A DNA stretch of 64,000 nt, taken from the IMG/VR virus record IMGVR_UViG_3300027759_000046, positions 189,138 through 253,137 of that record, one strand, 5' to 3'. This document shows positions 55,631 to 63,333 of this stretch, piece after piece. The translations under genes and the position numbers were made by a program. Below the pieces are notes generated by a model that saw only the letters and a list, made by a program, of their open reading frames with translations, made no database searches and was not told the origin of the DNA. Within the stretch, counting starts at the first letter, position 1; each line of letters opens with the position of its first letter.

Positions 55631-56364
55631 ATCAGTGAGTTAACGTCATCTGAAAAATCTTCTGGAGATTCTTCAGGCTTTATTACATCGGTGAGTCCAC
55701 GTTCGTTCATTACTTCAGTTTTTCTACCGGGGTGGGTTAAGTGTCGAGAGTCCTCTTCATCTTCAACCTCTTCAGCCGTTATCTCTTTAATTAAATTTTT
55801 TGTTCCTGCTGTGATGTAGTAATCGCTAGTTGAGGCAAGTAACGGAGTTACTGAACCAGATCCACCAGACGACTTTTGTTCAATATCACTATGCATCTTT
55901 TTATAAGTATCTTCCAGGAATAAGATATAGTTTGCTTGAGTTTTAATAACTGTTGTCAGCTTATCTTGTAATTGACCAAATACCTCAAATAGACGAGGGT
56001 GGGCATTACCTTGATTAATCTCCTCGGCAATTTTTTCAATTGCCATTCGAATCGTCTTTAACTGAAAGAAAATATTTTGGATATTTGTATTATCTAGATT
56101 CTGTTTTTGACGTAAGTAATCATGTTTGTCTAGAACACCTAGATCAACATAGAACTTTAACATTGATCCAGTAATATCCTTTGCCTGTTTTTCAAATTGA
56201 GAGTTCATCTCAACGAAATCTAACGGCGGGGCTGCTGCGATTTCTCCAAGCTGCTCGTCAACGATATCGTCTTCTCCATTTGGACCTGTTGAGTAACCTC
56301 GTAGGAGATCCTCTAACTCACTTTTGATTTGAGCTTTCTTTTGCTTATCGAATACTTGACTCAT
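55627..56364 (-). CDS. terminase small subunit (T4 gp16-like)
   Basis: HPRLFEVFGQL resembles the gp16-family HPRAYEV motif; immediately upstream of the large subunit. Confidence 0.7.
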   Translation of the reverse strand: MSQVFDKQKKAQIKSELEDLLRGYSTGPNGEDDIVDEQLGEIAAAPPLDFVEMNSQFEKQAKDITGSMLKFYVDLGVLDKHDYLRQKQNLDNTNIQNIFFQLKTIRMAIEKIAEEINQGNAHPRLFEVFGQLQDKLTTVIKTQANYILFLEDTYKKMHSDIEQKSSGGSGSVTPLLASTSDYYITAGTKNLIKEITAEEVEDEEDSRHLTHPGRKTEVMNERGLTDVIKPEESPEDFSDDVNSLI

Positions 56365-56370
56365 ATAATA

Positions 56371-56616
56371 TTAGTTTATGCGGTTTTCGTTTTTATCTAG
56401 TGCAGGATTAGCAAATATTTTGATCTGCTTAACTGCTTCAATGTGTTCGTAAATGTAGGTTTCAAGATAGCTCATGAAGCCGTCTAGTATTGGATTTGCA
56501 CCAAACATTTGGTTAGACAAAGTCTTCTTTAGAATTGAGTCTTTGTACTTAAAACCCAGATGCAGGCGTTTGTCCTTGCGATTGTATATTGTCCAGTAGA
56601 GAGAATTTCTTATCAT
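56371..56616 (-). CDS. hypothetical protein
   Basis: 81-aa ORF between the baseplate gene and terminase. Confidence 0.55.
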   Translation of the reverse strand: MIRNSLYWTIYNRKDKRLHLGFKYKDSILKKTLSNQMFGANPILDGFMSYLETYIYEHIEAVKQIKIFANPALDKNENRIN

Positions 56617-58301
56617 TATACGATTCCTAATTTTTTACGAACTACTTTCTGTGATTTAATTTCAATATTTAGTGCACCTAACGAGCCGTCAGATAGTCCA
56701 GTTTGATATGCATTACCGTTTCGATCGGACCAACCTCCTCTGATTACTGGGAATTCGGCTGATTTAATTATAATATCATTAAATTCGTCTAGTCCAACTC
56801 TATCAGTTTCACGTCTATTCGGCCTTTCCGTAAAAGCAACCTCATTCAGTTCAGATAGTATTGTGATGCTCACTGAGTCAACACCATTTACCTCCTCAAC
56901 TATTTTAATTAGATCACTCTTTGGAACACGGTCGTTTCGGTTAAGTTTAATAAAGTAGTTGCCGACTGCGTCTGAAATATCTGACTTAATAATATCATTT
57001 GAAACATCGTCAAATGCAATAACGCTGATGTTTAGCACGTATTTAGTAATAACTGGATCCAGCAAATTAATTTCACTTGAAATCATTTTTGTTCCAGAGC
57101 GTTCAATGTATTTTAGAAGCTCATTTTTTTGAAATTGAGTTAACGTGAATTTGGATAGAGCCAAGTTAAAATAGTCAGTTCCGGTTTTAAACATTTGCGA
57201 AACGTCTGGCACAAGAAATAAGTTAATCATTCTTGCGTCTAACTCATCTAGGAAAACTCTAATGGTTGAGAACATCTGCATTTTGTGAAGTAGAACTTCG
57301 TAATTATCAACGTTAACTAATGCAAAATTCTTTGATGCTTTTGGCGCGATTAATCGAGTTAAGGCAATCTCTTCAGGATCAACACCAAAACTTGGTGGAC
57401 TTACTGTGTAAATATCAAAATATTCATTAAGGTTTATCTCTTCTCCGATTGGAGAAAATGCAGTCTCAGCGAAAGTAAAGAATACTTGACTTGGATTATC
57501 AATTATGATATTTCCGCCAGCACCCTCTGATACTAAGTATTCAACAACGATTTCAGAACCGGCTGCTGGAATTTTACCAAATGAACCGTTTCCAAAATAG
57601 ATGTCTAATCCATTAGTTATCCCGGTTTTAGCAATGAAACCTTTTCCGCCGCGAGGCATGTCTAACATTGACTCGTATTTGGTCCATTGTTCTCCATTGA
57701 CATACACCTTAACCTTAAAATTATCGATGTAGTAATTATTTGGAAAACCTAACTGGTAACTCTCAAGAGCTTGGCCCTTTCCAGTAAAAGTTTGGGTCTC
57801 AATTTGACCTTGTCGCAGGCTAAAAACTGTTGGGGGTTCATTGCCTGTCAAGTTTAATCGGATTTCATCTTGCGGTAATTCAATAACGTAGGTTAGGCCG
57901 TTATTATCGCAAGTTACCTTGAACAGATCGTTTAATAGGGCTTTATTAACGGGTGGAGTTATTCCAGGTTTTCTAACTACTCTGATCTGGGCAGTTGCGC
58001 CAATTGCACGGCTTGGATTGTGGCCTGCTAAACTTGCTAATGAATAGATTGAAGATGGTCGAGTTGCCTCATTGATATTCAACTCAGTAATTGAGTCTTC
58101 AATATAATAAAATATTAATTGGCTTAAGTTTTCAAAAACAATCAACAACTGACCAAATGGCGAAGCTGCCGTAAAGATGGTCTTTGCCTGCTTGAAACGA
58201 TTCTGCAAGAATGTGATTGATTCTCCCAAGATATCGTTTATTCGGATCTTTAGGCTCGTGAAGAGTCTAAGTGATGTATTTTGACTTGATAGGTTTGCCA
58301 T
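56616..58301 (-). CDS. baseplate wedge subunit (T4 gp6-like)
   Basis: SIYSLASLAGHNP, IYFGNGSFGKIP..G..IVVEYLVSEGAGGN and ALVNVDNY. Confidence 0.88.
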   Translation of the reverse strand: MANLSSQNTSLRLFTSLKIRINDILGESITFLQNRFKQAKTIFTAASPFGQLLIVFENLSQLIFYYIEDSITELNINEATRPSSIYSLASLAGHNPSRAIGATAQIRVVRKPGITPPVNKALLNDLFKVTCDNNGLTYVIELPQDEIRLNLTGNEPPTVFSLRQGQIETQTFTGKGQALESYQLGFPNNYYIDNFKVKVYVNGEQWTKYESMLDMPRGGKGFIAKTGITNGLDIYFGNGSFGKIPAAGSEIVVEYLVSEGAGGNIIIDNPSQVFFTFAETAFSPIGEEINLNEYFDIYTVSPPSFGVDPEEIALTRLIAPKASKNFALVNVDNYEVLLHKMQMFSTIRVFLDELDARMINLFLVPDVSQMFKTGTDYFNLALSKFTLTQFQKNELLKYIERSGTKMISSEINLLDPVITKYVLNISVIAFDDVSNDIIKSDISDAVGNYFIKLNRNDRVPKSDLIKIVEEVNGVDSVSITILSELNEVAFTERPNRRETDRVGLDEFNDIIIKSAEFPVIRGGWSDRNGNAYQTGLSDGSLGALNIEIKSQKVVRKKLGIV

Positions 58302-58401
58302 CGGTAACGGACTTCTTTTTGATTATTTATCAGCCCAATCTTTTCTTTGCAAAACCATGACCTTGGATAAATACTTTTAGTATAATACTTTTATACTACA
58401 T

Positions 58402-58770
58402 GGGGGTGCTTGGATTTGACGCGGATGGTTCAAGTATGCTCGCACGCCGAGGATGATGCTAAGACTCGCTAAAACGTATCAAAACGATAAGTGGAAACAC
58501 TAACTTCTGGAGCCTAGTTAACGCTGGCGTTAGCACTCCGGTTACTGAAGAGCTTTTAGCTGCATAAGTAACCAAGCGGCAACTGCTTGACCGAACCAAA
58601 GTTGCAAAACCAGCATGGCGTAGCGGCCAAGTCTAACCGTTACCGACTTTTAGCTCTAAGTCGTTAAAGAATGAGATAGTTGGTCCAGTTAGAAAATGGG
58701 ACTAAGCGTGTGAACGAGAGTTTACTCGAAAATCTTGCGGACACGGGTTCGACTCCCGTCACCTCCACCA
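58402..58770 (+). ncRNA. ssrA: tmRNA
   Basis: 5' GGGGGTG pairs with 3' CACCTCC-ACCA with a G3:U wobble; GGATTTGAC 5' motif; T-arm CGGGTTCGACTCCCG; tag ORF 58493-58567 GNTNFWSLVNAGVSTPVTEELLAA*. Confidence 0.96.
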
Positions 58771-58777
58771 TGTCTTA

Positions 58778-58802
58778 AAGGCTTCCATTACGGAAGCCTT
58801 TT
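58778..58802 (+). terminator. intrinsic terminator after tmRNA
   Basis: AAAGGCTTCC-ATTAC-GGAAGCCTTTT. Confidence 0.85.
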
Positions 58803-58834
58803 CTTTTTAGACAGCCTGATTGATAAATAAGAGT

Positions 58835-59587
58835 ATGAAGGCACTTAACACCGACGATATTTTTTTAAGGAATTTAACAATAGCTCTACTTGATCTCCTG
58901 AATGGATCAATGACACTTTCTCTGTCTAGAGACGATCATAAAGAGACATTCTCTGTTCCATTTCTCTATAATTTTGGAACTGATGAGGGTTTCTTAAAGG
59001 ATTTTTATATTGGACTCCCAGACAACTGTCAAATCCCAGTAGCCGAAGGCACTTACGATATTATTCCAAGAGGAATTGTTACCCTAGGATCATTTCAGGT
59101 AAAATCATCAGATATTACAAATCGATTCATTCGTGGACAGTACTCCGAATTGGAACGCGGACCAAACGATCAAAACGTTTTAACTGGATATTCTGCTCAA
59201 CTCTATTCTCTACCAATGTCAGTTAAGTTTGACGTAAAGATTATTTGCGATAACTTAAATAAAGCATTCAAGATTGCTGAGAGAATGTTAGACATTAATT
59301 ACGCAAATCGTGTAATGTATTTTCAATACAATGGAGTTCGTATTCCGGCTCAATTCCAGTTTCCAACAAATGAAACGGTTGACAAGGTTTACAAATTTAC
59401 AATGAATGAAAATAACAAGATCAATGTGAGTCTTTCAATTGATGTTGAGACCTATTTCCCAAGCTTTGAGCAGAGTTCTAAGAGGCTTAGCACAAATGTT
59501 ATGGAAAGAGTTAATATCAATAAAAAGGACGATACTGGAAATAATATGACAAGCAGTTGGGTTGATCAAAATACACCTATCATTTAA
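58835..59587 (+). CDS. tail terminator/sheath stabiliser (T4 gp15-like)
   Basis: VPFLY, IPRG and PMSVKFDVKIICDNLNKAFKIAERM pattern; GATAAATAA at 58822. Confidence 0.7.
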   Translation: MKALNTDDIFLRNLTIALLDLLNGSMTLSLSRDDHKETFSVPFLYNFGTDEGFLKDFYIGLPDNCQIPVAEGTYDIIPRGIVTLGSFQVKSSDITNRFIRGQYSELERGPNDQNVLTGYSAQLYSLPMSVKFDVKIICDNLNKAFKIAERMLDINYANRVMYFQYNGVRIPAQFQFPTNETVDKVYKFTMNENNKINVSLSIDVETYFPSFEQSSKRLSTNVMERVNINKKDDTGNNMTSSWVDQNTPII

Positions 59588-60369
59588 TGAAGTACTTATT
59601 AGAATTTAAAACATTTACAATTACTGAAGGCGGTAACGCTTTTCCTGATGCACAAAGCCTTGATCGTGGCGCGGTTGAACCGGCTTTTGCTAAATTCCAA
59701 GATGCAATGTCAAATGTATTTGGCAAAGCTGAACTTGAATTAATTGGTTCATGGAAACAAAAAGAAGTATCTGGTGATCTAGATACTCTATTCTATTCTG
59801 ACTTAACTCTTCCTGAGATCTCAGCAAAAGTTCAAGAAGCAGGATACGAAACCAAGATATTTTATGGATTTAATATTGTGTCCGTTAAATTTGAAATTTC
59901 ACCAGAGCATTTTGTTCAATTTGATATGTTCGTTAGGCCGATGGACACCAACCGTGATGTAAACGATTTGTTCTATAAATCAACTGATGAAGAACGGTAT
60001 TCAACAAAGCATCGTGTCTTTTTGATCTTTTGTGCGCTAGATTCTATGAAGTTTGATAAGATTGAAAAAGACGGTGTGTTAACTCATTTTAAAGGTTATA
60101 TGCTTCGACCTGACGGTCTCTATCAATTCACGAAAGAGATGAAGAAGATTAATTATAAGATTATGGATCGCCAAAAGTTAACCGACGACCTTGATCAAAT
60201 TTCGTTGATCTTATTTGGTAAAGTCTATCCGTATCAACAATGGAATACTTACGAAAAGACTCTCACCTTGCTTGAGAAGAATCCTAAATTAGACATGAAG
60301 ACTATTCTTGACGAATATCGTGCTAAATTGGATGAAGAAGGTCTTGTGGTTCCAGGTGGAATCAGTTAA
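59587..60369 (+). CDS. Pol-beta-superfamily nucleotidyltransferase, leader-tagged
   Basis: MKYLLEFKTFTITEGGN; LIGS..SGDLD..VQFD. Confidence 0.78.
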   Translation: MKYLLEFKTFTITEGGNAFPDAQSLDRGAVEPAFAKFQDAMSNVFGKAELELIGSWKQKEVSGDLDTLFYSDLTLPEISAKVQEAGYETKIFYGFNIVSVKFEISPEHFVQFDMFVRPMDTNRDVNDLFYKSTDEERYSTKHRVFLIFCALDSMKFDKIEKDGVLTHFKGYMLRPDGLYQFTKEMKKINYKIMDRQKLTDDLDQISLILFGKVYPYQQWNTYEKTLTLLEKNPKLDMKTILDEYRAKLDEEGLVVPGGIS

Positions 60370-60980
60370 TCAAATTCCAATTCCAAATCAAAATTGAAAT
60401 ACTTAAAATCTACAGTAAATGTCTGAAATTGTGGAGTAACTGACGAGTACGATAGAGTTATTGCACTCATTTGAGTAATCATTGGTCGGTTAAAGATAAT
60501 TGAACTTACTCCATACCCTTCATTATTTAAAAGAGTTAATCTGATCGGGCTAAAATACGGATGGTTGCCGTGTCTGATTGGACTATTTGTTAGAGCTTGA
60601 CCCAACGAATTGCCTGTATTCTTTTCGCTTGTGTTTGCAGGCTCAAGGTAATTAAGTAACGTATCCATCATGATGAAATAGTTTAAGTAGGCATCAGTTA
60701 ACTTAAAAGTTAATTTAAGATCCCTATTAAACATGTCAGCAATGGGCTTTGAAGATTGAACTTCTTGTATTTTACCAAGAGTTCTGGTCTGAGTCGGCAA
60801 TTGGCTTGTTAATCCAGGAAAGGTTACGCTCTGAATAGTTGATGCCATAAAATCTGAAATTGATTTATACGGCAATAACAGATTACGATAGTATTTCTCA
60901 TACTTCGCATTGACCGCATCATTAAAGAAATCTTGCGGTAAATTAACTAAAAAGCTGTTCTGTCTAGAATTAAGTATCAT
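60366..60980 (-). CDS. tail tube/tail completion protein (T4 gp3/gp19-like)
   Basis: IQSVTFPG..LKLTFKLTDAYLNY..FTVDFKY. Confidence 0.65.
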   Translation of the reverse strand: MILNSRQNSFLVNLPQDFFNDAVNAKYEKYYRNLLLPYKSISDFMASTIQSVTFPGLTSQLPTQTRTLGKIQEVQSSKPIADMFNRDLKLTFKLTDAYLNYFIMMDTLLNYLEPANTSEKNTGNSLGQALTNSPIRHGNHPYFSPIRLTLLNNEGYGVSSIIFNRPMITQMSAITLSYSSVTPQFQTFTVDFKYFNFDLELEFD

Positions 60981-60990
60981 ACAGAATTAT

Positions 60991-63333
60991 CTATATGAGG
61001 CCGAGAGCGGTCTTTATTTTATCAATTACCGTTGATGTTTTGATTGTTCTAGAGCACTCAAACATTCGGTGAGTTCCTTTGTGTACTGGACACCAGTTCC
61101 AATCAGCCGGATCAAGCTTGTGAGTATTGAAACAGCCTGAACATTTGCCGGCTGGTGCACAAACTCTATGAGTGTTCTCAACCGTTTCGGTGTAATCATA
61201 CGAGAATCCTGAAATAAGGACAAGTGGGGTCGTGGTTGCCCAAGCCAACCAGCTTAGTCCACTACCAATTCCTACAAAGACTTGAGACTCTTCAAGTTCA
61301 CGAATGACATTCTCGATTGGACCTGACGCTAATTTGCGAACGCTAGTTGGATGAGAATTACCCATGAAGCCATCTTCTTCTCTTGACACCAGCACTACTT
61401 CATAACCGGTTTCCTTACACCAGTCAACTACTTCTTGCCAGCCGTCTGGATTATTCCAGTATTTTGCTTGGCATGTGCCGTGAATTGCGATTGCGATCTG
61501 TTTTTTCTTTTCAACCTTTGGAATCGCAAGTAGAGGTTTAGTCTCTTTATACTCAAGACCCAAGATATCAAATGCACATTTTTGCATTGCCTGATCCTTG
61601 ACTTCTTTGACGTTTCGGTTTAGATCAATTTTATGATCTTGATCGTAATACCAGCCAATATTGTACATTGCAACAATATTATCAACAACATCGCCAGGTT
61701 TAATGAACTCAATTTCCGGATACTGTTTTTCAAAAAGTTGGTTTAGATGAGTTGAACAAATTACCTTGCAACCGTGCTTCTTACGAAACTCTTCAACTGC
61801 TGGAAACCAGGCCAAACTATCGCCAAGAGAAGATGAATCTACTGAAATATAGACTCTACGATCTTTTAGGCTAATTGACTCGTCTAGGACAAGTTGACCG
61901 CTTTCTTTGTGAGTTACCTTAACTCTCCAATCAATATAGTATCGCTTATTTGACTTGACCCACATATTACGGGTGATTGTGTCCTTGTGCTCGACCTTGC
62001 CAGTTTTCTTATTAATAAACTCAACTAAGTATTCGCCTGGGGCTCCCCCAGTTATCTCTACGTGTGGTCCATTTACGAAATGATAGTTAATAGTCAAGTC
62101 TTTTGCACGCTTTAGATTCACCTCTCTGATGTGACTTGAACGTTCATCAATATGATCAGCTGCAAGCCGTGCAACTCTATCCCAGTTAAAATCTTGATGG
62201 ATCTTTTGAGCATCAGCTAGCGCCTTCTCCTTATGTGATTTATAATTTAAGTAGGCATCTCTCATTGCTCTACGTAAGTCGTTAAAATCAGGCTCATAAT
62301 AATTGCCAACGATATCTGCAGTAGTTACGGTCGGTTTATCTTCCGCTGAGCCAAGCGCTGAGCGTTCGCCAACAATTTTGACTGGAATACCTTTGCCTTC
62401 AGCAAACTCCATTTGGCCTGAGCACTCTGAATAGATTGATGGAGTTCCGCAAGCCATTGCCTCGATTAGTGGCAGATTCCAGCCTTCACTACGCGCACAT
62501 GATACAAATACGTTAACTGACTTGATTAGGTCAACGTACTCTTTTCTTGGCGGCATGTGTAATACTTTAATACGGTCGTCTTTGAATTCGTATTTTGCTA
62601 AGCGCTCTTCGGTTGTTTGACAACCGTCTGCACTAAAGCCCCATGGATTATCAGCAGATAAGATTAGATCTACAGGTTCGTCCGCTGAAAATTCTTCCAA
62701 GAAAGCTCTAACTATTTCGGTTGTAGATTTGCGGTAATCCCAACGACCGAATAGGCCGAATGTAAATCGGTCTTCTCCGGTTAATGGATGAACGACATTT
62801 TCAGGAAAGAATGTCTCAATATCAACTCCTTCTGGGATTACAAATATTTTATCAGCTGGGTAGCCCTGTTTGACTGTGCAATCTCGTTGCCATTTAGACG
62901 GAACCCAAACTTCATCAAATTCTAATAACTTATCAAAGAACTCTGATGGCTGTAGCGTTGATTCCCAAACGTTATAGGCAATCTTGTAATTATCGTAATT
63001 GTGATAAAAGTAATGATGATTAGTTTCGTTTAGAATTAGGTCGACATGAGTCTGGCCGAGGTTTGGCCAAGATTGATATACTTTATGATCGCTAAGAGTA
63101 CGATCTCCATTCCATAGAGATTGCTCAACAAGTAAAGACTTGATCTGATCTGTCATATACGCCTCACCATTATGAGGTTCGTCAGACATACCCTCCCACG
63201 AAGATCCTACTGTGTAGTTTCGGATTTCAAGAGGAAGCCTCTCTGCTAATTTTGTGAAAAATGATTGAGCATGATTATTATAACCGGTATTGCCAATAAA
63301 AGATGTGTGGACCTTGAGTTTTAACTTTGACAC
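60991..63333 (-). CDS. GT4 glycosyltransferase fused to Aah/TibC-like O-heptosyltransferase domain
   Basis: EGWNLPLIEAMACG (GT4); SLGDSLAWFP, GIGSGLSWLAW and CSGCFN..WCPVHKGT.RMFECSRTI (Aah/TibC Cys ligands). Confidence 0.88.
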   Translation of the reverse strand: MSKLKLKVHTSFIGNTGYNNHAQSFFTKLAERLPLEIRNYTVGSSWEGMSDEPHNGEAYMTDQIKSLLVEQSLWNGDRTLSDHKVYQSWPNLGQTHVDLILNETNHHYFYHNYDNYKIAYNVWESTLQPSEFFDKLLEFDEVWVPSKWQRDCTVKQGYPADKIFVIPEGVDIETFFPENVVHPLTGEDRFTFGLFGRWDYRKSTTEIVRAFLEEFSADEPVDLILSADNPWGFSADGCQTTEERLAKYEFKDDRIKVLHMPPRKEYVDLIKSVNVFVSCARSEGWNLPLIEAMACGTPSIYSECSGQMEFAEGKGIPVKIVGERSALGSAEDKPTVTTADIVGNYYEPDFNDLRRAMRDAYLNYKSHKEKALADAQKIHQDFNWDRVARLAADHIDERSSHIREVNLKRAKDLTINYHFVNGPHVEITGGAPGEYLVEFINKKTGKVEHKDTITRNMWVKSNKRYYIDWRVKVTHKESGQLVLDESISLKDRRVYISVDSSSLGDSLAWFPAVEEFRKKHGCKVICSTHLNQLFEKQYPEIEFIKPGDVVDNIVAMYNIGWYYDQDHKIDLNRNVKEVKDQAMQKCAFDILGLEYKETKPLLAIPKVEKKKQIAIAIHGTCQAKYWNNPDGWQEVVDWCKETGYEVVLVSREEDGFMGNSHPTSVRKLASGPIENVIRELEESQVFVGIGSGLSWLAWATTTPLVLISGFSYDYTETVENTHRVCAPAGKCSGCFNTHKLDPADWNWCPVHKGTHRMFECSRTIKTSTVIDKIKTALGLI

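What the first reader, a model, noticed from the sequence alone, without database searches (positions are those of the whole stretch)
58402..58770. Phage tmRNA with an unusually long 24-residue tag
Seen: after ATAAGT the resume codon GGA (58493) opens GNTNFWSLVNAGVSTPVTEELLAA*. This is more than twice the typical ~10-aa tag, with an FW-containing insert but a conserved LAA end. Upstream are both a GATAAATA and an AGTATAAT motif. No smpB is present in the window. Inference: the tag may add an adaptor or protease-redirecting signal, altering the fate of rescued proteins during infection.
Basis: partly seen in the sequence, partly recalled or inferred. Interest (0 to 1): 0.6.

Follow-up and report, generated by a model that had tools for sequence, protein, structure and literature searches.

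The report
Phage tmRNA with conserved long tag
A 253-kb freshwater phage carries its own ribosome-rescue RNA (tmRNA), and its unusually long 24-residue protein tag is conserved at both ends across a large family of uncultivated phages, which suggests the phage labels unfinished proteins with its own kind of degradation signal.

Summary
Window 58402-58770(+) is a canonical one-piece tmRNA (Rfam 113.8 bits; ARAGORN gives the same 24-residue tag). The window is the end of a 253-kb T4-like jumbo phage from freshwater, with 24 tRNAs and no SmpB. The resume codon at 58493 is right: it lies four nucleotides after the conserved frame-setting A, and the disputed N-terminal half shows a clear coding signature in 18 distinct relatives (pN/pS 0.25 against 0.84-0.92 off-frame). 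The tag has two conserved ends, an aromatic block and an acidic/LAA-type end (0.39), joined by a neutral linker (0.97). An RNA hairpin sits inside the reading frame and may account for part of the extra length. RNA-library contigs cover the tmRNA alone, at higher depth than its neighbours. Tags in sampled Bacteroidota (6-10 aa) and Cyanobacteria (14-17 aa) are shorter and different. Long tags are not unique: Bxz1 has 25 residues, bacterial tags span 8-35, and many uncultivated phages carry 21-31. The phage also encodes ClpP and a ClpC-like unfoldase without its N domain, but complete long-tag phages exist without them. Verdict: a real, probably expressed gene and a new variant of a known kind. 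The adaptor or protease-redirecting idea is plausible but untested.

The parts
58357..58386 (+). Sigma-70-like promoter: -35-like ATGACC, 18-nt spacer, TATAAT. It includes the extended TAGTATAAT (58378-58386) and, in the spacer, GATAAATA (58366-58373).
   Evidence: Promoter scan, 10 of 12 positions. TAGTATAAT occurs 17 times in the genome against about 7 expected, and 8 of 8 TAGTAYAAT-N4-9-ATG sites open ORFs of at least 50 aa. Both motifs are kept upstream of the tmRNA in 23 of 25 relatives.
58402..58770 (+). One-piece tmRNA gene (ssrA) with an encoded CCA end.
   Evidence: ARAGORN. Rfam RF00023, 113.8 bits, model positions 1-374. Orthologues sit at the same position in dozens of related phage contigs.
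58402..58408 (+). 5' strand of the acceptor stem (GGGGGUG). It pairs with 58760-58766 (CACCUCC), giving G3:U70, the alanine identity pair. A58767 is the discriminator and CCA is 58768-58770.
   Evidence: Sequence. In the family, 7 of 7 positions pair in 24 of 25 sequences, G3:U70 is kept in 24 of 25, and positions 4-7 show compensatory changes.
58488..58492 (+). Frame-setting upstream sequence UAAGU. A58489 corresponds to E. coli A86, four nucleotides before the resume codon.
   Evidence: Sequence. Conserved as UAAGU, UACGU or UAAUU in all family members. The rule comes from PMC2481249.
58493..58567 (+). Tag reading frame: resume codon GGA, 24 sense codons (GNTNFWSLVNAGVSTPVTEELLAA), stop TAA at 58565-58567.
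   Evidence: The frame is open and 23-27 codons long in all 25 distinct relatives, and every indel is a multiple of three.
58505..58522 (+). Conserved N-terminal aromatic/hydrophobic block of the tag (F-W-S-L-V-N; family pattern [FI]-W-[SDN]-[LIV]-[VI]-[ND]).
   Evidence: pN/pS 0.25 in frame against 0.84 and 0.92 in the off-frames. Trp is invariant, and the Leu and Phe/Ile codons vary synonymously.
58507..58541 (+). RNA hairpin inside the reading frame: outer stem CUGGAG/CUCCGG, inner stem GUUAACG/CGUUAGC, loop CUGG.
   Evidence: MFE folds of all 18 distinct ORFs show a hairpin here, built from different stem sequences in different subclades. Native ORFs against 500 synonymous recodings give mean z = -1.33, with 16 of 18 negative. 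Val codons in the stem are always GTT.
58547..58564 (+). Conserved C-terminal block of the tag (E-E-L-L-A-A): an acidic pair followed by an ssrA-type non-polar end.
   Evidence: pN/pS 0.39 against 0.58 and 0.84 off-frame. The last Ala uses all four GCN codons.
58540..58573 (+). Helix 5 (GGUUACU/AGUAACC), enclosing the last tag codons and the stop codon as in canonical tmRNAs.
   Evidence: MFE folds and the alignment.
58777..58808 (+). Intrinsic terminator: 10-bp stem, 5-nt loop, then a T run, 7 nt after the CCA end.
   Evidence: Terminator scan. A comparable hairpin follows the gene in many relatives.

Best explanation
This is a functional, phage-encoded one-piece tmRNA. It is transcribed from a strong sigma-70-like phage promoter. 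By inference its 5' end is trimmed, host AlaRS charges it with alanine, and host SmpB and EF-Tu deliver it, because the phage has no smpB. During infection it would enter stalled host ribosomes and free them for phage translation. It would also append Ala plus a 24-residue tag to the unfinished proteins. The tag is read from GGA at 58493. It has two selected parts: a C-terminal acidic/non-polar end of the ssrA type (the class of signal read by ClpXP/ClpAP-like proteases), and an upstream aromatic block. A linker that is free to vary at the peptide level joins them, and its RNA forms a hairpin. The most likely role of the upstream block is as a second recognition element, either an adaptor-binding site or a site for a second AAA+ protease. 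On this view the phage puts its own tag on rescued proteins instead of the host's. Shown here: the gene, the reading frame, conservation and selection on both ends, the difference from sampled candidate-host tags, and presence in RNA libraries. Inferred: use of host SmpB, degradation, and what binds the upstream block.
For: Gene identity. Acceptor stem with G3:U70 and compensatory changes. Frame: U-A at -5/-4 in every member, matching the A86 ruler rule. Translation and selection: all indels are multiples of three; Leu, Ala and Pro columns use 3-4 synonymous codons; Trp is invariant. pN/pS for the whole tag is 0.51 against 0.91 and 0.86 off-frame. By partition it is 0.25 for the N block, 0.97 for the linker and 0.39 for the C end. 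Not host-like: 49 Bacteroidota tags are 6-10 aa, and cyanobacterial tags are 14-17 aa, basic and without Trp. Expression: 100%-identical contigs in three metatranscriptomes cover 58409-58768 only; in X4 the depth is 68 against about 3 on the flanking genes, and X23 holds nothing else of the 4.4-kb stretch. Promoter and terminator. No SmpB. Breadth: the same tag architecture appears in more than 30 related contigs and in complete 270-kb genomes.
Against: No partner for the upstream block was found; the phage has no SspB, ClpS or Lon. Part of the block overlaps the in-frame hairpin, so RNA-level selection confounds the peptide signal. The pN/pS values are pairwise counts on related sequences, not a tree-based test. 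The host is unknown, so its tag could not be compared directly. The RNA evidence rests on assembled contigs; DNA carry-over is not excluded, and the ends are only approximate. A few relatives end in VEA or LVA instead of LAA. One related subgroup has a 9-residue tag, so the long form is dispensable there.
Confidence: 0.6

Rival explanations
1. The extra length is an RNA feature and not a peptide signal. A hairpin of about 35 nt inserted in the reading frame serves the RNA, for example in folding, protection from nucleases or pacing of translation. The peptide it encodes only has to stay in frame to reach the C-terminal degron.
For: A hairpin occurs at this place in all 18 distinct ORFs, built from different stems in different subclades. 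Native ORFs are more structured than synonymous recodings (mean z = -1.33, 16 of 18 negative). Val codons in the stem are always GTT, while codons outside stems vary. The linker is neutral at the peptide level (pN/pS 0.97). Without the hairpin codons the tag would be about 13 residues, a normal length.
Against: The N block has pN/pS 0.25, and this includes the Phe/Ile and Leu positions that lie outside or in bulges of the stem. Trp stays invariant in the subclade where the stem has shifted away from it. The z-scores are modest, and RNAalifold found no consensus helix on the mixed alignment. Hairpins in other long-tag groups are not significant.
Confidence: 0.25
2. The tag is read by the phage's own protease. 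The ClpC-like unfoldase without an N domain, together with phage or host ClpP, recognises the upstream block. This would give the phage a private degradation channel for rescued proteins.
For: The same genome encodes a ClpP with an intact Ser/His/Asp triad and a 658-aa ClpC-like ATPase. The ATPase aligns to B. subtilis ClpC residues 155-796 and has IGF at the position of the VGF ClpP-docking loop. clpP and the tmRNA share the TAGTATAAT promoter class. All four complete core-clade genomes with the tmRNA have the ATPase, and a complete relative lacking the tmRNA lacks it too. Of 19 large records with the ATPase, 8 have a tmRNA, and 7 of those 8 also have ClpP.
Against: The closest near-complete relative has the same tag but no ClpP. 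Complete phages with 24-residue tags of the sister group have neither the ATPase nor a true ClpP. The co-occurrence within the core clade can be explained by shared ancestry. No binding was tested.
Confidence: 0.12
3. The tag is simply the host's tag, taken up together with the host ssrA gene and carrying no phage-specific meaning.
For: Phage tmRNAs usually resemble those of host lineages (PMC9004378). The 3' part carries a signature otherwise found almost only in cyanobacterial tmRNAs. The first five and last three residues resemble Bacteroidia-type tags.
Against: No sampled bacterial tag is similar: Bacteroidota tags are 6-10 aa and cyanobacterial tags 14-17 aa, basic and without Trp. DNA-level similarity to bacterial tmRNAs is confined to the tRNA-like ends. 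The long tag diversifies within phages while staying at one syntenic position.
Confidence: 0.08
4. Translation resumes further downstream, for example at the in-frame GCU at 58523, and gives a tag of normal length.
For: ARAGORN does pick downstream starts in some relatives.
Against: Those calls are inconsistent with the alignment. The conserved U-A at -5/-4 precedes 58493 only. The Rfam alignment places the resume codon there. The codons before 58523 show the strongest coding signature of the whole tag.
Confidence: 0.03

Closest known systems
Bacterial one-piece tmRNA (ssrA, Rfam RF00023), e.g. E. coli or B. subtilis
   Same: tRNA-like domain with G3:U70, PK1, a frame-setting A four nucleotides before the resume codon, a tag ending in non-polar residues/LAA, a stop codon in helix 5, and dependence on SmpB.
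   Different: It is carried by a phage that lacks smpB. The tag has 24 residues against about 10-15, with a conserved Trp-containing block and an additional hairpin inside the reading frame.
Mycobacteriophage Bxz1 (cluster C) tmRNA
   Same: Phage-borne, and its tag is long (25 residues by ARAGORN), acidic, with an aromatic pair and an Ala-rich end. From my own knowledge it is much longer than its host's tag.
   Different: No detectable sequence relationship, a different host phylum, and an end in ALV. No function has been assigned to its tag either.
E. coli ssrA tag with the SspB adaptor (bipartite tag)
   Same: The logic of two separable elements: an upstream adaptor-binding part and a C-terminal protease-binding part (established knowledge of SspB/ClpX).
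   Different: The elements here lie about 12 residues apart instead of adjacent. No SspB homologue is present in the phage. The binding partner is unknown.
Mycoplasma long ssrA tags read by Lon (Gur and Sauer 2008, cited from my own knowledge; the paper's title appears hits)
   Same: A long tag in which hydrophobic or aromatic residues upstream of the end are the recognition signal for a different protease.
   Different: The organisms are unrelated. Here the ClpX-type end is kept, and Lon involvement is untested.
Other tmRNAs of uncultivated large phages found here (sister groups with 21-31-residue tags)
   Same: The same 3' backbone signature or the same accompanying ClpC-like gene, long tags with an aromatic/acidic middle and a VAA/LAA end, and intermediates that share the FVGA...AVAA part.
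   Different: Different conserved blocks, for example T-F-E-D-A-M-S-F in place of F-W-S-L-V-N. Several of these phages lack any Clp genes.

Membership tests
tmRNA (RF00023) | Covariance-model score above the curated gathering score over the full model | tested here: met
   113.8 bits against 47, model positions 1-374, E 1e-43. ARAGORN agrees.
tmRNA (RF00023) | tRNA-Ala-like domain: 7-bp acceptor stem with G3:U70, a T arm, and a discriminator A with CCA | tested here: met
   GGGGGUG/CACCUCC, then A and CCA. The stem is kept by compensatory changes in relatives, and G3:U70 is present in 24 of 25.
tmRNA (RF00023) | Resume codon four nucleotides after the conserved A (E. coli A86), downstream of PK1 | tested here: met
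   U58488-A58489-A-G-U, then GGA. The same holds in all relatives. The rule is from PMC2481249.
tmRNA (RF00023) | The tag frame is translated and ends in a non-polar, Ala-rich C terminus, with the stop codon in helix 5 | tested here: met
   Coding signature. The tag ends in LLAA and helix 5 spans 58540-58573. Translation itself is inferred from the evolutionary pattern and was not observed.
tmRNA (RF00023) | Works with SmpB | not testable with these tools
   No SmpB gene is present in the 253-kb record, which is 94% complete. Use of host SmpB is inferred.
tmRNA (RF00023) | Made as a stable RNA | tested here: inconclusive
   Contigs from three RNA libraries cover the tmRNA alone, at 100% identity and at higher depth than the flanks. 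These are assembled contigs, so exact ends, strand and DNA carry-over remain open.
ssrA-type ClpXP/ClpAP degron | C-terminal non-polar tripeptide such as LAA with a free carboxylate | tested here: met
   The window tag ends in LAA. Relatives end in LAA, VAA, IAA or LVA, and two end in VEA. Actual degradation was not tested.
Adaptor-assisted (SspB-type) bipartite tag | An adaptor protein that binds the upstream part of the tag | tested here: not met
   No SspB or ClpS family match in the phage genome. Host adaptors are unknown. Two conserved blocks joined by a neutral linker fit the logic only.
ClpC (for the phage ATPase, outside the window) | Two AAA+ modules, a UVR-type middle domain, a ClpP-docking (V/I)GF loop, and an N-terminal Clp_N adaptor domain | tested here: not met
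   D1, D2, the UVR motif and the IGF loop are present, and the protein aligns to B. subtilis ClpC 155-796. The N domain is absent, so it is ClpC-like but not a full ClpC.
ClpP (for the phage protease, outside the window) | ClpP fold with the Ser-His-Asp triad | tested here: met
   Pfam 193 bits; NCBIfam NF011091 at 252 bits, below its equivalog cut-off of 361. Ser, His and Asp align with solved ClpP.

The most novel reading that the evidence does not exclude
Large environmental phages use their own tmRNA to replace the host's degradation tag with a phage-specific, two-part tag. Its conserved aromatic block is read by a phage-chosen factor; in this clade that could be the ClpC-like unfoldase lacking its N domain, working with phage or host ClpP. 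This would give the phage a private route for disposing of, or recycling, proteins from ribosomes that stall when host mRNAs are destroyed. The hairpin inside the frame would be a second, RNA-level adaptation of the same gene.
Probability: 0.15. Interest if true: 0.8.

Novelty: new variant of a known kind. Interest (0 to 1): 0.55.

Why it matters
Phage tmRNAs have been catalogued (about 2% of phage genomes) but are treated as simple copies that keep ribosomes running. Here the tag itself is under selection in phages, differs from the tags of the two candidate host phyla sampled, and is shared by a large and widespread group of freshwater jumbo phages. If the upstream block proves to be a recognition signal, phages would be shown to reprogram which proteins are destroyed, and by which protease, through trans-translation. 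The tag would also be a candidate orthogonal degron for protein-control tools. The finding is directly testable with tag-reporter fusions. It also shows that standard software mis-reads or misses tags in this family, so surveys of phage tags are likely biased.

Tried and rejected
(1) blastn of the tmRNA against deposited phage genomes found no match.
I reached bacterial genomes through handles instead.
(3) Cyanophage idea: the 3' signature pointed to Cyanobacteria. However, the genome has no psbA, the phage ClpP is closer to a Bacteroidota subgroup (50% identity and full length, against at most 43%), and the closest cultured phages by TerL infect Bacteroidota or Sphingomonas. The host remains unresolved, and the signature itself is absent from 50 sampled Bacteroidota tmRNAs.
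(4) Scoring the family profile on bacterial tmRNAs matched only the tRNA-like ends, and the cyanobacterial set was pre-selected by the signature, so the donor lineage cannot be named.
(5) GATAAATA as a T4-type late promoter: TATAAATA is under-represented (12 sites against about 38 expected). ATAAATA followed closely by ATG is only modestly above composition-matched controls.
(6) ClpP as an obligate partner is rejected, because the closest relative lacks it.
(7) Phage Clp genes as the general readers of long tags are rejected, because complete long-tag phages lack them.
(8) RNAalifold on the mixed tag alignment did not recover the hairpin, because the subclades pair in different registers. I used per-sequence folds with synonymous-recoding controls instead.
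(9) Hairpins in other long-tag groups were not significant.
(10) No complex prediction was run. The tag is shorter than the 30 residues the tool asks for, and no specific partner is supported well enough.

Full report
**What is there.** Rfam's tmRNA model matches from its first to its last position, at 113.8 bits against a gathering score of 47. By eye the gene has the following features:
- An acceptor stem GGGGGUG/CACCUCC with the G3:U70 alanine identity pair, a T arm, and an encoded ACCA end.
- The sequence UAAGU directly before GGA at 58493.
- 24 sense codons, then TAA at 58565-58567.

A sigma-70-like promoter (ATGACC, 18 nt, TATAAT; 58357-58386) precedes the gene, and a 10-bp hairpin with a T run (58777-58808) follows it.

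**Context.** The window is the last 64 kb of a 253,137-bp IMG/VR virus record estimated to be 94% complete.
- The tmRNA lies between a gp6-like baseplate wedge gene and a gp15-like gene, a few kb from the large terminase and PhoH.
- The genome holds 24 tRNA genes and this one tmRNA, but no SmpB.
- The closest cultured phages by terminase are only 30-38% identical: uncultured huge phages, Sphingomonas phage PAU, Tenacibaculum and Flavobacterium phages, and Lak phages.
- Public runs that hold the stretch are freshwater lake and river metagenomes from 17 studies.

**A family, not a singleton.** Searching IMG/VR with the neighbouring baseplate protein gave 78 related loci. In those 65-100% identical to the query, a tmRNA sits at the same position.
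- I read each tag from the aligned resume codon. All 25 distinct sequences encode 23-27 residues with one architecture: G-N-T, one or two variable residues, [FI]-W-[SDN]-[LIV]-[VI]-[ND], a variable stretch, an acidic pair, then L-x-[LVI]-[AV]-A.
- ARAGORN mis-called or missed several of these.
- More distant relatives carry a different but related 23-residue tag with Trp or Phe, and one subgroup has a 9-residue tag.

Three results argue against that.
- In E. coli the frame is set four nucleotides after the nearly invariant A86 (PMC2481249). Here U-A lies at -5/-4 of 58493, and this holds in every relative.
- All indels in the tag region are multiples of three. Leu, Ala and Pro columns use three or four synonymous codons.
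- Pairwise Nei-Gojobori counts give pN/pS 0.51 in frame against 0.91 and 0.86 in the two off-frames.

Split into parts, the values are:

| Part of the tag | pN/pS in frame | Off-frames |
|---|---|---|
| N-terminal block (the disputed part) | 0.25 | 0.84, 0.92 |
| Middle, about 12 codons | 0.97 | 0.96, 0.95 |
| C-terminal end | 0.39 | 0.58, 0.84 |

So the frame is read from 58493. Both ends of the peptide are under purifying selection, and the middle behaves as a neutral linker. These are pairwise counts on related sequences and not a tree-based test.

**An RNA element inside the frame.** The two Val-Asn codon pairs are always GTTAAC, a self-complementary hexamer.
- Folding shows a hairpin at 58507-58541 (outer stem CUGGAG/CUCCGG, inner stem GUUAACG/CGUUAGC), just before a canonical helix 5 that holds the stop codon.
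- A hairpin occurs at this place in all 18 distinct ORFs, but with different stems in different subclades.
- Native ORFs are on average more structured than 500 synonymous recodings of the same peptide (mean z = -1.33; 16 of 18 negative).
- This gives a competing reason for the extra length, since without these codons the tag would have about 13 residues.
- It does not explain everything. The hydrophobic positions outside the stem are conserved through synonymous change, and Trp stays invariant where the stem has moved away from it.
- RNAalifold found no consensus helix on the mixed alignment, and hairpins in other long-tag groups are not significant.

I therefore rank the RNA-only reading as a serious rival and not as the main explanation.

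**Expression.** Logan contigs from four metatranscriptomes were laid on 56000-60400.
- In X4, a 100%-identical contig covers 58409-58591 at depth 68, while contigs on the flanking genes have depth about 3.
- X23 holds only 58421-58577 and 58597-58767, and nothing else of the stretch.
- X8 holds 58618-58768.

The contigs stop within a few bases of the predicted mature ends. This fits an abundant, stable RNA. Contigs cannot prove strand, exact ends or the absence of DNA.

**Is the tag host-like?**
- A 3' signature of the family occurs, among 185,579 species genomes, almost only in cyanobacterial one-piece tmRNAs. Their tags are the classical 14-17-residue basic type without Trp.
- A sample of 49 Bacteroidota tmRNAs has tags of 6-10 residues, and none carries the signature.
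- The phage ClpP is closer to a Bacteroidota subgroup (up to 50% identity, full length) than to Cyanobacteria (at most 43%). There is no psbA.

The host is therefore unresolved, with Bacteroidota weakly favoured. In neither phylum is the tag a copy of a sampled host tag. The first five and last three residues resemble Bacteroidia tags, as if such a tag had been split by an insert of about 15 residues. That reading is an inference.

**Phage protease genes.** Outside the window, the genome encodes two Clp components.
- A ClpP (L204:1486-2157, minus strand; 193 bits in Pfam; Ser/His/Asp aligned with solved ClpP).
- A 658-residue ClpC-like ATPase (L205:1204-3180, minus strand). It aligns to B. subtilis ClpC residues 155-796. 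It has the UVR-type middle domain and IGF at the position of the ClpP-docking VGF loop, but no N-terminal adaptor domain.
- clpP and the tmRNA share the TAGTATAAT promoter class.

All complete core-clade genomes with the tmRNA have the ATPase, and a complete relative without the tmRNA lacks it. Two results weaken the link. The closest relative has no ClpP, and complete phages with 24-residue tags of the sister group have neither gene. A dedicated phage reader of the tag is therefore possible in this clade, but it is not a general explanation.

**How unusual is it?**
- Phage tmRNAs are known: 402 of 18,146 phage genomes (PMC9004378), huge phages (PMC7162821), and Bxz1 and phage G (PMC4131195).
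- Bacterial tags span 8-35 residues (PMC8012679).
- Bxz1 has a 25-residue acidic tag with an aromatic pair, while phage G, LR756500 and Lak-A2 have 10-13 residues.
- A scan of IMG/VR with the 3' signature found at least 120 contigs. Among them are this group, a large sister group with 23-25 residues, a group with 29-31 residues, and groups with 12-15 residues.
- Jumbo phages that share the ClpC-like gene have 21-26-residue tags of yet another type.
- I found no paper that describes conserved long tags in phage tmRNAs or links them to phage Clp genes.

**Verdict.** This is a real, very probably expressed phage tmRNA. Its 24-residue tag is correctly read, and selection acts on an upstream aromatic block and on an ssrA-type end, joined by a neutral linker that also forms an RNA hairpin. 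It is a new variant of a known kind.

Noticed in passing
L204:1486-2157 (-) and L205:1204-3180 (-), i.e. G000:C1 about 133.0-133.7 kb and 111.0-113.0 kb, outside the window: The phage encodes a ClpP with an intact catalytic triad and a ClpC-like double-AAA+ unfoldase that lacks the N-terminal adaptor domain but keeps an IGF ClpP-docking loop. This ATPase type occurs in at least 598 IMG/VR stretches, many of them on 100-476-kb contigs.
   Followed up: partly
Genome-wide, e.g. G000:C1:133707(-), 129037(-), 140595(-), 194040(-), 219145(-); in the window 58378-58386: TAGTATAAT marks a promoter class (17 sites against about 7 expected) with an (A/G)ACC element about 15 nt upstream. At 8 of 8 sites with an ATG 4-9 nt downstream, that ATG opens an ORF of at least 50 aa. 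This implies leaderless mRNAs, clpP among them.
   Followed up: partly
window 58813-58828: The gp15-like gene probably starts at the ATG at 58826, directly after GATAAATA-AGAGT, and not at the TTG listed at 58820. Thirteen ORFs in the genome have xATAAATA 3-8 nt before their ATG, against 3-5 for non-overlapping control motifs. This may be a late-promoter/leaderless arrangement.
   Followed up: partly
G000:C1:118413-140279 (outside the window): 24 tRNA genes lie in three clusters on the minus strand, including three tRNA-Met(CAT) genes. clpP lies next to the largest cluster.
   Followed up: no
L012, L015, L040, L041, L049, L053, L348-L352: ARAGORN mis-places the resume codon or finds no gene in many tmRNAs of these phage groups, so automated surveys will under-report long tags.
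   Followed up: yes
L087 (3.5-kb contig binned in a Flavobacterium MAG, G031:C66): This MAG has its own tmRNA on contig C2 and a second one, with a cyanobacterial-style 14-residue tag, on a short contig. The short contig is probably mis-binned or of phage origin.
   Followed up: no
family alignment: Only about 8 of 25 family tmRNA genes encode the 3' CCA (the window's does). The others would need a CCA-adding enzyme.
   Followed up: no
window 60991-63333 (-): A 780-residue protein combines a GT4-type glycosyltransferase with a C-terminal heptosyltransferase/TibC-like part. It is wedged between a tail-tube-like gene and small ORFs.
   Followed up: no
L391, L420, L446 (IMG/VR contigs): A separate phage tmRNA group encodes 29-31-residue tags with a conserved E-D-M-M-S-I-P block. 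These are near the upper end of the known tag-length range.
   Followed up: no
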